From Macrostomum lignano (Eukaryota): DNA of 36,066 bases. The notes beneath the pieces were generated by a model, which worked only from the letters and a program-made list of their open reading frames with translations, searched no databases and was not told the DNA's origin. The stretch covers positions 1 to 36,066 of the forward strand of contig NIVC01003801.1 of the NCBI GenBank assembly GCA_002269645.1, in the 5' to 3' direction. This document shows, piece after piece, positions 14,292 to 23,009 of this stretch (its first letter is position 1; each line of letters begins with the position of its first letter). A program made the position numbers and the translations under genes.

Positions 14292-17200
14292 ATGATGAGT
14301 CAATTTCGACTGCTGACTTTCGTCCTGCTCGTCAGCTGGGTCGCGACTGGTGCTGGTGAGCAGAGTTGAAAACAATGAACGGACTCAAGTTTGTTTCATG
14401 GTAGAACTTTTTCTATTGAGCACGATGCTCTGGAAGTAATTTGAACAGGATCTCACAGGGTGTCACAGGATCGCACAGGATGTCACAGGATCGCACAGGG
14501 TGTCACAGGATCGCACAGGATGTCACAGGATCGCACAGGATGTCACAGGATCGCACAGGATGTCACAGGATCTCACAGGGTGTCACAGGATCGCACAGGA
14601 TGTCACAGGATCGCACAGGATGTCACAGGATCTCACAGGGTGTCACAGGATCGCACAGGATGTCACAGGATCTCACAGGGTGTCACAGGATCGCACAGGA
14701 TGTCACAGGATCGCACAGGATGTCACAGGATCGCACAGGGTGTCACAGGATCGCACAGGATGTCACGGGATCTCACAGGGTGTCACAGGATCGCACAGGA
14801 TGTCACAGGATCGCACAGGATGTCACAGGATCGCACAGGATGTCACAGGATCTCACAGGGTGTCACAGGATCGCACAGGATGTCACAGGATCGCACAGGA
14901 TGTCACAGGATCTCACAGGGTGTCACAGGATCGCACAGGATGTCACAGGATCTCACAGGGTGTCACAGGATCGCACAGGATGTCACAGGATCGCACAGGA
15001 TGTCACAGGATCGCACAGGGTGTCACAGGATCGCACAGGATGTCACAGGATGTCACAGGATCACACAGGATCGCACAGGATGTCACAGGATGTCACAGGA
15101 TCACACAGGATGTCACAGGATCGCACAGGGTGTCACAGGATCGCACAGGATGTCACGGGATCGCACAGGATGTCACAGGATCGCACAGGGTGTCACAGGA
15201 TCGCACAGGATGTCACAGGATCGCACAGGATGTCACAGGATCGCACAGGATGTCACAGGATCGCACAGGATGTCACAGGATCGCACAGGATGTCACAGGA
15301 TCGCACAGGATGTCACAGGATGTCACAGGATCACACAGGATCGCACAGGATGTCACAGGATGTCACAGGATCACACAGGATCGCACAGGATGTCACAGGA
15401 TCGCACAGGATGTCACAGGATCGCACAGGATGTCACAGGATCGCACAGGATGTCACAGGATCGCACAGGATGTCACAGGATGTCACAGGATGTCACAGGA
15501 TCCACAGGATGTCACAGGATGTCACAGGATCACACAGGATCGCACAGGATGTCACAGGATCGCACAGGATGTCACAGGATCGCACAGGATGTCACAGGAT
15601 CTCACAGGGTGTCACAGGATCGCACAGGATGTCACGGGATCTCACAGGGTGTCACAGGATCGCACAGGATGTCACAGGATCGCACAGGATGTCACAGGAT
15701 CGCACAGGATGTCACAGGATCTCACAGGGTGTCACAGGATCGCACAGGATGTCACAGGATCGCACAGGATGTCACAGGATCTCACAGGGTGTCACAGGAT
15801 CACACAGGATGTTACGGCCAAAAGCTGTTGATTAGAATTGGTTTGGTATTAAATTACATTAACAATCTAGTAGGTAAATATTGAATATGAAACATGGAGT
15901 GCTTTAATAACCCTTAAATTTCATGTTACCCAAGTCAACATATTACATATCATCAGTCACATTTTTAAATGTGGAGGAAGCGAAACGAGGGGGTATGCGA
16001 AATTTAAGACATGAAGTTTGTAGAATTTAAAACAGACCGCTTTGAAAGGTCCATAAACTGAACCGTCGAGTCCCCCCCACAGGTCAGTCGGGCGAACCTT
16101 CTGCAGTGAAGTTCTGGTCTTCGCCTGCGGGCCGCACGCCTCGTTCTACTGGGCCCAGACTGGAGCTGATTCAATAGCGATCTCGACAGCTGCCCTGCCT
16201 CTCAGGCTGACCGTCATGCCCCGCTCGATGGCACTCCAGGCGCTGTCTCCCTGGTCCAAACCGGCTCCGCCACCCGCGTCAACGAGCTCGGGGAGGCGAC
16301 GCTGGCAGCCGGGAGCGGCGATTTCAATCGCAACGCCAGCTCCCTGATGCTGGTGGCTGACGAATTCTGTCACCACATCCGGTTGAGCGTCGCTCAGGCT
16401 TCCCCAATGCTGACTCTGCGTCATCAGAACTTCAATCTTCGAGCCTCGATCTACGATAGATGCCTTGTTCTTGACTGACTCCGCTTTGACGTTGCACTGC
16501 GTTAAATGTGAGTTCTGTACCCCTGCTTGTTGATTGTAGTCTTGGCCGGGAGACTTGCTCGTGAAAAACCAATGCACTGGGTCAGAGGGACAACTTAGAA
16601 AATGGGAGACACTACCTGAGGAAATAGGAAACACTACCTGAGGAAATAGGAAACACTACCTGAGGAAATAGGAAACACTACCTGAGGAAATGGGGGGCAA
16701 ACGGCAACTTAAACCGAGGGACTCTGTGACATCCGCCAGCTTTTCGTTTTTCGAGGAGGCTCTTCCCCCTCCTTTTCGTTCTGGCCTGGCGTGGAAGCGG
16801 CTAGCTTCCTCGTCTTGGTCTGCTGGTGGGGGACGGATCCCCCCTGCTGCTTTTTTGCGGGGCAGGTGGCTGCTAAGTAGTTGGCTGCTGGCTAAGCGCC
16901 AACTACCCATCGACAGCCCTTAGTTGCAACTGGTACCACACGGGTTCTCGAGGGCCGCTCTTGTGGGGGAGGGCTCGGGCGTCGGCTGTCAACTCGACCT
17001 GGCGCCTGTGTCCCAAGCCCGCAGCCGGCCTCCCGCCCCCTGATCTTGCAGAGTGTGGACCGGGGGCCTGCCGGAGCCTCGCCTGGGAGCAATCCTGGGA
17101 TAAGACGGCAACCCAAAGCTTCTCTGCTGTTTACCGTGGCAGAGGGTAGCTCCACGGAGCTGGCTGGGGTATATCCAGTCCCCGAGCGGTTACCCCCCCT

Positions 17201-20200: not shown

Positions 20201-23009
20201 AATCTCGTCATGGACGAACTTCTAACCGCTGACATTCCCAGCAGTATCACCAGGGCGGGCTACGCCGATGACGTTGCCGCGGTCGTCAGCGGACCCGACC
20301 CCGCCACTCTGCGCAACCTGATGCAGCAATTCGCCGACAAGGCGGCCGACTGGGCTACACAGCATGGCCTAAAAATCAGCGTCACTAAGACTGTCGCTGT
20401 CGTTTTCACCAAGCGCCGTAAATGGGAGATGAAAAACCTCACTGTCTATGGCAGAAACATCCCCTTCAAGAAGGAGGTCAAATACCTCGGTGTGACGCTA
20501 ACGCATGACCTGCGCTGGACGAAGCACCTTGATAACGTCATCGGTCGGGCAAAACGCTGCTTTGCCCAGCTGCGCAGAGCCATCGGGCCGACTTGGGGCC
20601 TCTCGCCTAGAACGGTCCGTTGGATTTATACCGGCATCATCCGGCCCAGTATCACATACGCGAGTCTCATCTGGACTAGCGTGCTGGAGCAGAAGGCCGC
20701 CCGTCAGCGGCTGTACCAGCTTCAGGGCAGCATTTGCCGTGCCATCACAGGTGCGTACCCGTCCACCCCTTACGAGGGGCTGAACACTATCCTTAACCTA
20801 CCTCCGCTTCACCTATTTATTAGGGCGGAGGCTATGAAGTCTGCCTCCCGGCTTATCAGAGATAAAACGTTAAATAACGCGCCCTCTGGCTTTATGCCAA
20901 TGAAAACATTAATCCCGCATATGGACTTTGTCCGCCGCGACCTTAACAACATCCACATGGACCTGGGCAATGTGGATAGTCGACCTCCCGCCCTCAACAT
21001 CAGGAGGGGCTTCAAGACCGCCATCCCTGGCCGAGACAACATTCCGCTGGATGTCGGTGTGAACCGGCGCAGCCAGGGCATTCACTGCTTCACCGACGGC
21101 TCGCTGTTCAACGGCCGCGCTGGAGCGGGTATTGCCATTTTCCACGAGGGTAAGATGCTTCTCCAGGAAAGTCTGCACCTCGGTGAGAACACCTCAGTTT
21201 TCCAAGCTGAAATTTGCGCCATTGAGCAGTGTGCCCAGCAACTGTTTCAGGCGAACATTAATAATTTTGACATTAATTTCTACACTGATAGCCAAGCTGC
21301 TATTAAGGCCTTAACCACTGAGAATATCTCCGCTGCTACAGTATCTCAATGCCACCGCAGTGTGCAATCTCTCTCAGTCCTTAACAGGATTAGAATTATC
21401 TGGACACCTGGTCACAGCAACATCCTGGGCAACGAGCTCGCGGACTCTCTCGCCAAGGAGGGCAGCAACCCAGACGGCAACCACCGTCTGATGAGGCTAC
21501 CCACCCCCAGGTCGCAAGTCACCCGCCATATCAACAGGTGGCTCCATCAGCAGCACCAGCTCCACTGGAACAGCTGCACCGAGTACAGGCAGAGCCGCTC
21601 TGCCATGCCTAACCTGAACAGGAAAGTCTCTGATTATCTGATTTCGCTTAACAGAACCGACCTCAGGGAGATGTGCATGGTCCTAACCGGCCACGGATTC
21701 TTCCAGAGACATATATCGTTGCAAACCGGTTGCCCTCCCACCTGTCCCTTCTGTGGCATAGGAGAGGAGACCGCGGAGCATCACGTCACCTTCTGCCCTT
21801 ACTTCAACAAGGCGCGGCACAAATACCTCGGCCACCCCCAGCGGATGGACGAGCTGACCACCGCGGACAATATCCGAGACCTCCGCGCCTTCGTCCGGGA
21901 CTCCGGCCGGATGAGGGTCGCCGATGCCTCCACTGCGGACCTGCCGACTACTGGCGGGGACTGGGCGCACCCCCAAGGCTAATCCTTGTGCTCTTTTACC
22001 TTGGGGTTGCGATAGGGGCCTCGCGGCCTATTCGCGGCGCCTGCGCCCCCCGTCAGTAGTAAGTAAGTAAGTAAGTACCTGAGGAAATAGGAAACACTAC
22101 CTGAGGAAATGGGACACACACCACCTGAGAAAATGGGAGACAATACCTGAAGAAATGGGAAACACTATTTGAGGGGATCGGAAACACTAAGGAAATGGGA
22201 AACACTACCTGAGGAAATAGGAAACACTACCTGAGGAAATAGGAAACACTACCTGAGGAAATGGGAAACACTACCTGTAGAAATGGGACACACCACCTGA
22301 GAAAATGGGAGACAATACCTGAAGAAATGGGAAACACTATTTGAGGGGATCGGAAACACTAAGGAAATGGGAAACACTACCTGAGGAAATGGGAAACACT
22401 ACTTGAGGGAATGGGAGACACTACATGTACCTGAGAGAATGGAAGTCGAAGACGCTTCCAGGTATACACCCCTGAGAGAATGACATGGTAGCTAGATGGA
22501 CATCGCATTTTTTAATTGCGACATCTCCTGGAATAGGAGAATAAGGATAATGTATCTAATCCCGACAGACGAGCGACAATGTTCTTGGCGGCACAGACTG
22601 GCTGTATCCGGTGGTAGCTACTTATTTTGTCCAGCAGGAAGTTCCTGCCAGTTGGTTGGATCTGAATATATAGCGCAACACTATTCACGGAGCAAGCCGG
22701 AATCAGCGCGGAACTCCAGCCGCGGTGTCATTCCAATCGGCAACCAACGCCAGCTTCTACCTGTATGTTACGCTTGGTGACAGCCTGAGACTTCTCAAGA
22801 ACAATGCCAGCTCAGAATTCTCGGTGGCCGCAACGTTCGTTTGAGCTACGTAGATTCCAATGGCCCTAACTGTCGAAGCTACCGCCTGCTACTGACTGCA
22901 CCAACGCCTGGCGTGCTGATATCCGACAGTGTTGGAAAACTCATGGCAGTTGCGTGGAACGTCAAAGACTATGTTCGCAACGTCAATTTTTCATTTAGTT
23001 GCGATTCAG
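14292..23009 (+). CDS. Putative secreted protein with AbfB/CBM42-like beta-trefoil repeats (frameshifted; 3' end unresolved)
   Basis: Exon 1 CDS 14292-14355 encodes signal-peptide-like [21 protein letters not shown] with a GTGAGC donor. Exon 2 is 16083-16507 ([12 protein letters not shown]; LRHQNFNLR; [10 protein letters not shown]). Exon 3 is 22569-23009 ([43 protein letters not shown]). Junction phases are all 1. The motifs resemble the AbfB consensus (PGL..G.VSFES.N.PG.YLRH.NF.L.L...DGS.LF..DATF). Several frameshifts are needed, so no long ORF appears in the track. Confidence 0.6.
14446..15812. repeat. 10/20-bp minisatellite (TGTCACAGGA/TCGCACAGGA)
   Basis: Direct reading; intron 1 of the AbfB-like gene. 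It produces three stop-free pseudo-ORFs. Confidence 0.96.
17241..18164 (+). CDS. Retrotransposon ORF1 (gag-like, 307 aa)
   Basis: First ATG at 17241 in the 17046..18164 ORF. It has a low-complexity N-terminus, a basic patch, YAKVA and no CCHC knuckle, and lies directly upstream of pol. Confidence 0.8.
18164..21982 (+). CDS. Retrotransposon ORF2: APE endonuclease - reverse transcriptase - RNase H - CCHC (1272 aa)
   Basis: APE: QINLHH, QEPY, DANAH, IDLT, SDH. RT: FRPISL, DFEGAFD, PQGGVL, YADD, YLGV. RNase H: FTDGS, FQAEI, TDSQ, PGH..GNELAD. C-terminal CPFC...H....C. No stops or frameshifts. Confidence 0.97.

What the first reader, a model, noticed from the sequence alone, without database searches (positions are those of the whole stretch)
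14292..23009. Hidden secreted AbfB/CBM42-like beta-trefoil protein, invisible in the ORF track
Seen: a signal-peptide exon and two large exons with compatible splice phases. They carry repeated motifs ([21 protein letters not shown]...[28 protein letters not shown]...FSVAATF). Known: this pattern is typical of the AbfB/CBM42 arabinose-binding domain of fungal and bacterial glycoside hydrolases, which in animals is best known within otogelins; CBM42 pockets use a His and an Asp. Inference: the LRH...TDS repeat keeps both residues while the exon-3 repeat (YLYV...VAAT) has lost them. No VWD/C8/TIL or catalytic domain is visible. This may be a stand-alone secreted lectin/mucus protein with one functional pocket, possibly from a horizontally acquired domain.
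Basis: partly seen in the sequence, partly recalled or inferred. Interest (0 to 1): 0.72.

Follow-up and report, generated by a model that had tools for sequence, protein, structure and literature searches.

The report
Decayed AbfB-like secreted lectin gene relic
Upstream of the MCM3 gene of the flatworm Macrostomum lignano lie three real-looking exons of a once-secreted sugar-binding-type (AbfB/CBM42-like) repeat protein. Their reading frame is broken four or five times, so this is most likely a dead gene, not a hidden working lectin.

Summary
At 14292-14355, 16083-16507 and 22569-23009 (+) there are three GC-rich blocks bounded by consensus GT/AG sites. The first encodes a canonical signal peptide.

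The AbfB/CBM42 assignment is plausible but below threshold:
- Pfam PF05270 scores 20.9 bits against a cut-off of 22.8, and is the only family hit.
- My own HMM from four solved CBM42 chains gives 19.1 bits; the best of 5000 shuffles reached 8.0.
- No homologue turned up among 1.84 billion representative proteins for the exon-2 piece.

The window is Macrostomum lignano. The blocks sit 0.75-9.5 kb upstream of MCM3 on the same strand, and no VWD/C8/TIL or glycosidase domain is present.

The inferred ancestral reading needs five frame changes in 0.93 kb. In contrast, 4.9 kb of LINE ORFs in the intron are intact, and about 1.8 kb of MCM3 exons carry one break. No terminal exon is visible. The only database proteins containing these pieces are two chimeric UniProt models fused to MCM3.

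Best reading: a pseudogenised stand-alone secreted AbfB-like gene (confidence about 0.6). Assembly indels cannot be fully excluded, because one of the five sites is in frame in another assembly. Horizontal transfer is not supported. Interest is low.

The parts
14292..14355 (+). Exon 1: start codon and signal peptide [21 protein letters not shown], ending in phase 1 at the donor G|gtgagc
   Evidence: It is one of only 3 independent signal-like ATG starts found on both strands of the window. The UniProt model P0003 uses it as an exon.
14445..15812 (.). 20-bp minisatellite (69 copies) filling intron 1; it gives spurious 440-470-aa ORFs in three frames
16083..16507 (+). Exon 2: sub-repeats a, b and c (the first putative trefoil). 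Frame breaks lie at about 16127-16135 (1 base short in GGGCC), 16219-16222 (C4 here, C5 in the UniProt models) and 16458 (an extra A in GAT-A-GAT). An alternative acceptor lies at 16088.
   Evidence: The LRHQNFNLR...DALFLTDSA stretch aligns to the CBM42 motif.
16600..16691 (.). 22-bp minisatellite, 5' part (intron 2); it continues at 22076-22424 on the far side of the LINE
16694..22077 (+). Full-length non-LTR retrotransposon in intron 2. ORF1 is 17046-18164 and ORF2 is 18164-21982 (endonuclease, RT, RNase H). It has a (TAAG)n tail and a probable 13-14-bp target duplication (16681-16693 / 22078-22091).
   Evidence: Both ORFs are intact, which serves as an internal control for the assembly's indel rate.
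22076..22424 (.). 22-bp minisatellite, 3' part (intron 2)
22569..23009 (+). Exon 3: sub-repeats d, e, f and the first half of g. Frame breaks lie within 22674-22709 and at 22840-22842 (T3 where T4 is needed; also present in the UniProt models). It ends in phase 1 at TCAG|gtaaga. Read-through would add 31 mostly hydrophobic residues up to the TGA at 23102.
   Evidence: The exact piece 22674-22841 is the best CBM42 hit in the whole window.
23761..23835 (+). Neighbour, not part of the relic: MCM3 exon 1 ([25 protein letters not shown]). It sets the 3' limit of the relic. Further MCM3 exons follow at 29305-34554.

Best explanation
This is a pseudogene, or a gene relic in an advanced state of decay, of a lineage-specific, stand-alone secreted protein. 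That protein was built from 6-7 sub-repeats of about 45 residues of the AbfB/CBM42 (beta-trefoil, carbohydrate-binding) type. It lies directly upstream of MCM3 in Macrostomum lignano.

Shown:
- The exons, splice sites and signal peptide.
- The internal repeats and the sub-threshold AbfB similarity.
- The frame breaks.
- The neighbourhood.

Inferred:
- The ancestor was translated from exon 1, through exon 2 (16083), into exon 3 (22569) as one frame, and probably acted as a secreted lectin.
- Small indels then broke the frame 4-5 times and the 3' end was lost.
- Minisatellites and a LINE expanded the introns.
- The locus now makes no functional protein. The UniProt models that carry pieces of it are prediction chimeras with MCM3.
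For: (1) Frame breaks. The peptide that matches AbfB and matches itself internally can be read only by changing frame five times in 930 bp.
- The first 16 codons of exon 2 fit sub-repeat e only in frame 1, while the rest fits in frame 0 (score 46, z=6.8, against score 33, z=3.4, for frame 0 alone).
- The Pfam AbfB score rises from about 14-15 bits to 20.9 bits when the alignment is carried across the break at 22840.

(2) Controls in the same window.
- LINE ORF1 and ORF2, 4.9 kb lying between exons 2 and 3, are unbroken.
- About 1.8 kb of MCM3 exons have one break.
- At that background rate (about 1 in 6.7 kb), my Poisson arithmetic gives about 1e-5 for four or more breaks in 930 bp.

(3) Shared lesions. 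The breaks at about 16130 and at 22840 are also present in the DNA behind UniProt A0A1I8INT2 and A0A1I8IMG8. Those proteins align to the window without an indel across both sites, whereas the MCM3 part of those models is intact.

(4) Break types. Two of the five breaks (16458, and 22674-22709) are +1 or -2 changes. The one at 16458 lies outside a homopolymer. The exact site of the other is not resolved.

(5) Missing 3' end. The last sub-repeat ([12 protein letters not shown]) is cut at the exon-3 donor. No further AbfB-like piece occurs before the MCM3 ATG 750 bp away.

(6) No intact relative. Exhaustive phmmer of 16221-16457 against 1.84e9 representatives found only a translated tandem repeat. 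The word-index search found only the chimeric models.

(7) Codon composition. The GC3>GC1>GC2 pattern in the inferred frames is much weaker than in MCM3 (0.61/0.55/0.51 against about 0.8/0.63/0.43). This fits relaxed constraint.
Against: - One of the five breaks (the C4 run at 16219-22) is in frame (C5) in the sequence behind P0001 and P0003.
- The window also lacks one base in MCM3 at 34393 relative to P0003, although the downstream MCM3 sequence is perfectly conserved. So this assembly, or this copy, does carry 1-bp homopolymer deficits. Three of the five breaks are of that type.
- The published M. lignano assemblies share the same PacBio reads (PMC5730564). A break shared between assemblies is therefore not independent confirmation.
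- No nonsense substitutions are seen within the chosen frames.
- Neither RNA-seq nor raw reads could be consulted.
Confidence: 0.62

Rival explanations
1. The gene is intact and expressed, encoding a stand-alone secreted double AbfB-like lectin. The frame breaks are long-read assembly errors.
For: - Two places where the window has one base fewer in a homopolymer than the sequence behind the UniProt models: C4 vs C5 at 16219, and G vs GG at 34393 inside conserved MCM3.
- Three of the five breaks are 1-bp deficits in short runs (GGGCC, CCCC, TTT).
- All five splice sites and the signal peptide are well preserved.
- There are no in-frame nonsense substitutions.
Against: - The break density is about 35 times that of the control coding sequence in the same window, which includes 4.9 kb lying between the two exons.
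- Two breaks are +1/-2 events, and the one at 16458 lies outside a homopolymer.
- The last repeat is truncated with no terminal exon.
- No transcript-derived protein with this sequence is in the collections.
Confidence: 0.15
2. The locus is a real former gene, or a decaying one, but the repeats belong to another beta-trefoil or lectin family, or to a novel fold. The AbfB resemblance would then be motif convergence.
For: - Pfam is below its gathering score (20.9 < 22.8), and exon 2 alone gives no hit.
- phmmer against PDB finds no CBM42.
- hhalign probabilities are low (4-20 %).
- AlphaFold2 on one exact piece gave a helix, though at low confidence.
Against: - AbfB is the only Pfam family that appears at all.
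- Three separate sub-repeats (c, e, g) hit the same Y-[IL]-R-[HN]-x-N-F...D-A-T-F register.
- The real peptide scores 19.1 bits; the best of 5000 shuffles scores 8.0.
- The repeat period of about 45 residues fits a trefoil.
Confidence: 0.1
3. The blocks are upstream exons of MCM3 transcripts, as the UniProt models A0A1I8INT2 and A0A1I8IMG8 have it, or part of a polycistronic precursor. They would not be a separate gene.
For: - Same strand, 750 bp upstream of MCM3.
- Two deposited models splice 23009 to an acceptor at ATGGCAG|TT.
Against: - That acceptor destroys MCM3's own conserved start ([18 protein letters not shown]...).
- The models use weak internal sites (16292, 22808) chosen only to keep an ORF open. 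They also chain an MCM3 C-terminus, a mariner-like HTH and non-MCM sequence into 2236 aa.
- AATAAA signals lie at about 23406 and 23473, between the two units.
Confidence: 0.05
4. Chance: no gene was ever here. The motifs and the signal-like ORF are coincidences in GC-rich DNA.
For: - Every single similarity score is weak.
- The window is full of repeats that yield long spurious ORFs.
Against: Independent signals coincide:
- Five consensus splice sites sit exactly at the GC boundaries.
- The phases are compatible.
- A rare signal-peptide start is present.
- The internal repeats are significant.
- The window-wide top CBM42 hit falls here, and 0 of 5000 shuffles reach the real score.
Confidence: 0.05

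Closest known systems
CBM42 / AbfB arabinose-binding domain (Pfam PF05270; solved examples 1WD3, 3AKF, 3KMV, 9NXI, 9FNK)
   Same: - Sub-repeats of about 45 residues carrying the register [VI]-S-F-x-S ... Y-[IL]-R-[HN]-x-N-F-x-[LF]-R ... F-x-x-D-A-T-F.
- Sub-repeat c keeps the His and Asp of that motif.
   Different: - The score is below Pfam's gathering cut-off.
- There are 6-7 sub-repeats rather than 3.
- Most sub-repeats have lost the motif.
- No glycoside hydrolase module is attached.
- The frame is broken.
- The setting is an animal genome with spliceosomal introns.
Stand-alone secreted AbfB-domain proteins of Hydra basal-disc (adhesive) cells (PMC5080974: 310-aa and 588-aa proteins annotated with PF05270)
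   Same: Animal proteins of similar size whose only listed Pfam annotation is AbfB, with no hydrolase or mucin module listed.
   Different: The Hydra genes are intact, expressed and pass Pfam. The M. lignano locus is broken.
AbfB domain of vertebrate otogelin / otogelin-like (recalled from memory, not tested)
   Same: An AbfB-type domain in a secreted animal glycoprotein.
   Different: Otogelins embed it among VWD/C8/TIL/CTCK modules. None of these occurs on either strand of this window.
Decaying duplicated genes in the hidden-polyploid M. lignano genome (PMC5730564; PMC10468722 abstract)
   Same: - A repeat-rich locus: minisatellites make up about 1/3 of the window, and there is a young LINE.
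- Small indels disrupt a coding sequence, and even the MCM3 copy here shows one.
   Different: No intact sister copy of the AbfB-like gene could be found. It may therefore be a unitary loss rather than the loss of one duplicate.

Membership tests
AbfB / CBM42 (PF05270) | Profile score at or above Pfam's gathering cut-off (22.8 bits) | tested here: not met
   The frame-corrected peptide scores 20.9 bits, E=4.2e-4. An alternative junction gives 13 bits. The exact single-frame piece 22674-22841 scores 14 bits, E=0.057. Exon 2 alone gives no hit. AbfB is nevertheless the only family reported.
AbfB / CBM42 (PF05270) | Significant sequence similarity to experimentally solved CBM42 domains | tested here: inconclusive
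   - phmmer against PDB: none.
- HMM built from 9NXI, 9FNK, 3AKF and 3KMV (sequences taken): 19.1 bits for the corrected peptide. The top window-wide hit is E=0.018. The best of 5000 shuffles is 8.0 bits.
- hhalign: P = 0.001-0.01, with low probability.
AbfB / CBM42 (PF05270) | Internal sub-repeats of about 45 residues (three per trefoil) | tested here: met
   a vs e: z=6.8 (0/500). b vs e: z=4.5 (1/500). d vs c: z=3.6. d vs e: z=2.5. Sub-repeat f is not detectably similar to the others.
AbfB / CBM42 (PF05270) | Beta-trefoil fold | not testable with these tools
AlphaFold2 on the exact 79-aa piece alone gave one long helix with pTM 0.35, which is uninformative.
AbfB / CBM42 (PF05270) | Pocket residues: the His of ...RH... 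and the Asp of ...DATF... in binding sub-domains (their role is recalled from the CBM42 literature) | tested here: inconclusive
   Both align in sub-repeat c (LRH / TDSA). They are replaced in e (YV / AATF). In g the His is N and the Asp position is missing. Function is moot if the frame is broken.
Functional protein-coding gene | Uninterrupted reading frame from start to stop across the spliced exons | tested here: not met
   Five frame changes are needed (four if C5 is the true state at 16219), and there is no terminal exon.
Otogelin / gel-forming mucin | VWD, C8, TIL, CTCK modules around the AbfB domain | tested here: not met
   A Pfam scan of 265 non-repeat six-frame fragments (35 aa or longer) from both strands found only MCM domains (the LINE was excluded from this scan); AbfB appeared at E=0.057.
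GH54 / GH43 / GH62 arabinofuranosidase | A catalytic glycoside hydrolase module on the same polypeptide | tested here: not met
   No GH family hit anywhere in the window.
Recent horizontal gene transfer | A close bacterial or fungal homologue, absence of introns, foreign composition | tested here: not met
   - No homologue at E<1e-3 among 1.84e9 representatives for the exon-2 piece.
- Two spliceosomal introns with consensus sites.
- Exon GC resembles neighbouring host exons.

The most novel reading that the evidence does not exclude
The indels are assembly artefacts, or are confined to this copy. M. lignano then expresses a small stand-alone secreted protein of two AbfB-like trefoils with one intact sugar pocket. 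It would be a fast-evolving, lineage-restricted lectin, possibly of mucus or adhesive glands, paralleling the AbfB proteins of the Hydra basal disc.
Probability: 0.13. Interest if true: 0.45.

Novelty: new member of a known kind. Interest (0 to 1): 0.2.

Why it matters
Mostly as annotation hygiene:
- Two UniProt M. lignano entries (A0A1I8INT2, A0A1I8IMG8) are shown to be chimeras of MCM3 with pieces of this relic.
- In this repeat-rich, hidden-polyploid genome, exon-like blocks with good splice sites can be dead.

If the minority reading were right, it would add a flatworm example of stand-alone animal AbfB lectins. That is of modest interest for work on mucus and bioadhesion. It opens no long-standing question.

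Tried and rejected
- **Word-index protein searches** with the corrected peptide. Only the chimeric M. lignano models were found. Two of the three searches missed even those, so these negatives are weak.
- **Exhaustive phmmer** of the exact piece 16221-16457. The single hit, P0002, is a translated tandem repeat and is spurious.
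I therefore did not submit it to structure prediction, which has the same rule.
- **AlphaFold2 on the exact 79-aa piece** gave a helical artefact.
- **Exact look-ups** of P0001 and of the antisense 162-aa ORF in the contig collection: nothing on record, so no second genomic copy could be fetched.
- **phmmer against PDB**: only JetC noise.
- **MAFFT alignments of the sub-repeats** misaligned c and d, so the profile-profile result (P=3.6e-4) is only indicative.
- **Rescue of the frame breaks by mini-introns.** Rejected: the two frames abut within a few bases at each site.
- **Frame 2 or frame 0 for the start of exon 3.** Rejected: neither shows similarity to the other sub-repeats.
- **The antisense ORF 16146-16634.** Rejected: no family hit; it is typical antisense openness of GC-rich coding DNA.
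- **Read-through of the exon-3 donor as a TM or GPI tail.** Considered. It is an AT-rich translation of intron-like DNA that truncates the last repeat, so it is unlikely.
- **Other candidate exons upstream** (4.2-7.7 kb): no Pfam hit.

Full report
**Where the window comes from**

The frame-corrected peptide has one database relative, P0001 (UniProt A0A1I8INT2, named 'MCM3', Macrostomum lignano). Its cluster mate is P0003 (A0A1I8IMG8, 2236 aa). Both align to the window at 97-100 % identity over MCM3 exons:
- 23761-23835
- 29305-29415
- 29489/29525-29578
- 29764-30081
- 30617-31006
- 32290-32508
- 33780-33980
- 34178-34554

So the window is the M. lignano MCM3 locus. About a third of it (roughly 11.8 kb) is 20-29-bp minisatellite arrays. 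This fits the published description of the genome as more than half repetitive, with 15 % simple and tandem repeats and large duplicated blocks (PMC5730564), and as a hidden polyploid (PMC10468722 abstract).

**Checking the observation**

Exon 1 (14292-14355) reads [21 protein letters not shown] and ends G|gtgagc. A simple filter required an ATG, a basic residue, an 11-residue hydrophobic core and no stop. It found only three independent such starts on both strands of the window.

Exon 2 (16083-16507) has the acceptor cccccccacag|G and the donor AAAT|gtgagt. Exon 3 (22569-23009) has the acceptor cccgacag|A and the donor TCAG|gtaaga.

The quoted motifs are all present, and the phases agree at both junctions. 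The blocks are GC islands (0.60 and 0.51) in flanks of 0.33-0.46, just like the MCM3 exons.

Neither large exon is an ORF, however. Exon 2 must be read in frame 1, then 0, then 2, then 0. Exon 3 must be read in frame 1, then 2, then 1.

**Are the frames right?**

- Sub-repeat a, read across the first frame change ([14 protein letters not shown]|..[16 protein letters not shown]), matches sub-repeat e ([29 protein letters not shown]) with z=6.8 (0/500 shuffles). Frame 0 alone gives z=3.4.
- b vs e gives z=4.5.
The other two frames do not.
- The Pfam alignment runs across the break at 22840, and the score rises from about 14-15 to 20.9 bits when it does.
- In the inferred frames GC3>GC1>GC2 (0.61/0.55/0.51). 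This is the coding order, but far weaker than in MCM3.

The frame changes are therefore lesions in a former coding sequence, not artefacts of over-reading.

**Is it AbfB/CBM42?**

- Pfam reports a single family for the corrected peptide: PF05270, E=4.2e-4, 20.9 bits. This is below the 22.8-bit cut-off.
- The exact single-frame piece 22674-22841 gives 14 bits. Exon 2 alone gives nothing.
- I took four real CBM42 sequences from PDB alignments (9NXI, 9FNK, 3AKF, 3KMV) and built an HMM. Over all 1515 six-frame fragments of the window, the exon-3 piece ranks first (E=0.018) and the LRH piece of exon 2 ranks sixth.
- The corrected peptide scores 19.1 bits, with three sub-repeats (c, e, g) hitting the same Y-[IL]-R-[HN]-x-N-F ... 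D-A-T-F register. The best of 5000 shuffles scores 8.0.
- hhalign gives P=0.001-0.01.
- phmmer against PDB finds nothing.
- Exhaustive phmmer of 16221-16457 against 1.84e9 representatives finds only a translated tandem repeat.

Verdict: an AbfB-like repeat protein is the best label. Membership is not demonstrated.

His and Asp are kept in sub-repeat c and lost in e.

**Surroundings**

- Intron 1 is filled by a 20-bp minisatellite (14445-15812).
- Intron 2 holds a 22-bp minisatellite, into which a full-length non-LTR retrotransposon has inserted (16694-22077). Its ORF1 and ORF2 carry endonuclease, RT and RNase H domains. It has a (TAAG)n tail and a probable 13-14-bp target duplication.
- A Pfam scan of 265 non-repeat fragments on both strands finds only MCM domains (the LINE was excluded from this scan). 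There is no VWD, C8, TIL or glycosidase module. If real, the protein was stand-alone.
- Exon 3 ends 750 bp before MCM3's conserved ATG. The last sub-repeat ([20 protein letters not shown]) stops half-way at the donor, and no further AbfB-like piece follows.
- AATAAA signals lie at about 23406 and 23473.

**Gene or pseudogene?**

Five frame changes fall in 930 bp. Against this:
- 4.9 kb of LINE ORFs physically between the exons have no break.
- About 1.8 kb of MCM3 exons have one.

At that background rate, four or more breaks would have a Poisson probability of about 1e-5 (my arithmetic).

The breaks at about 16130 and 22840 are also present in the DNA behind P0001 and P0003. Those models align across both sites without an indel, and their MCM3 part is intact. 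Two breaks are +1/-2 events, and the one at 16458 lies outside a homopolymer.

There is also evidence the other way:
- At 16219-22 the window has C4, where the UniProt models imply C5 (MPPLDG, in frame).
- At 34393 the window lacks a G inside conserved MCM3. So 1-bp homopolymer deficits do occur in this sequence.
- The published assemblies share their PacBio reads, so shared breaks are not independent.

I put the pseudogene reading at about 0.6 and an intact gene hidden by assembly errors at about 0.15.

**The UniProt models**

P0001 and P0003 join exon 1 to an alternative acceptor (16088). They leave exon 2 at a weak site (16292), re-enter exon 3 at 22808, and splice 23009 into ATGGCAG|TT, which destroys MCM3's own start. 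P0003 also chains an MCM3 C-terminus and a mariner-like HTH. They are prediction chimeras and are not evidence of translation.

**Comparison and novelty**

Stand-alone secreted AbfB-domain proteins are already described in an animal, in Hydra basal-disc adhesive cells (PMC5080974). Otogelins carry the domain among mucin modules (from memory). No paper links AbfB to M. lignano's own genes.

Horizontal transfer is not supported. The locus has spliceosomal introns and host-like composition, and there is no close microbial relative.

This is a new, degenerate member of a known kind and is most likely dead. Interest is low.

Noticed in passing
window 34385-34400 (MCM3 exon 34178-34554): MCM3 itself has a 1-bp deficit here: TCGATCGC, where UniProt A0A1I8IMG8 implies TCGGATCGC ([11 protein letters not shown]). 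The downstream frame is still perfectly MCM3-like ([19 protein letters not shown]). This is either an assembly indel or a very young lesion in a redundant copy.
   Followed up: partly
window 16694-22077 (+): A full-length, apparently young non-LTR retrotransposon. ORF1 (372 aa) and ORF2 (1272 aa; endonuclease, RT, RNase H) are intact. It has a (TAAG)n tail and a probable 13-14-bp target-site duplication, CCTGAGGAAAT(G/A)GG. It inserted inside a 22-bp minisatellite.
   Followed up: partly
whole window, e.g. 2-517, 2519-4282, 8466-10215, 12733-14104, 14445-15812, 28539-29213, 31119-33760, 34668-36066: About one third of the window is minisatellite arrays of 12-29-bp units, each array with a different unit. 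Several give long spurious ORFs in three frames, and some sit inside MCM3 introns.
   Followed up: no
UniProt A0A1I8INT2 (P0001) and A0A1I8IMG8 (P0003), mapping to window 14214-34554: Both deposited M. lignano 'MCM3 / DNA helicase' models are chimeras. They fuse the signal-peptide exon and pieces of the AbfB-like relic to MCM3. In P0003 an MCM3 C-terminus and a mariner-like HTH are also fused in.
   Followed up: yes
window 6804-7679 (+) and 4241-5041 (both strands): GC-rich, non-repetitive open stretches of 120-270 aa with protein-like composition and no Pfam match. They may be exons of an unannotated upstream gene, or chance openness in GC-rich DNA.
   Followed up: partly
tool behaviour: The word-index protein search did not return P0001 for queries that contain 67 residues nearly identical to it (1 mismatch). 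Negative results from that tool should be read as weak.
   Followed up: no
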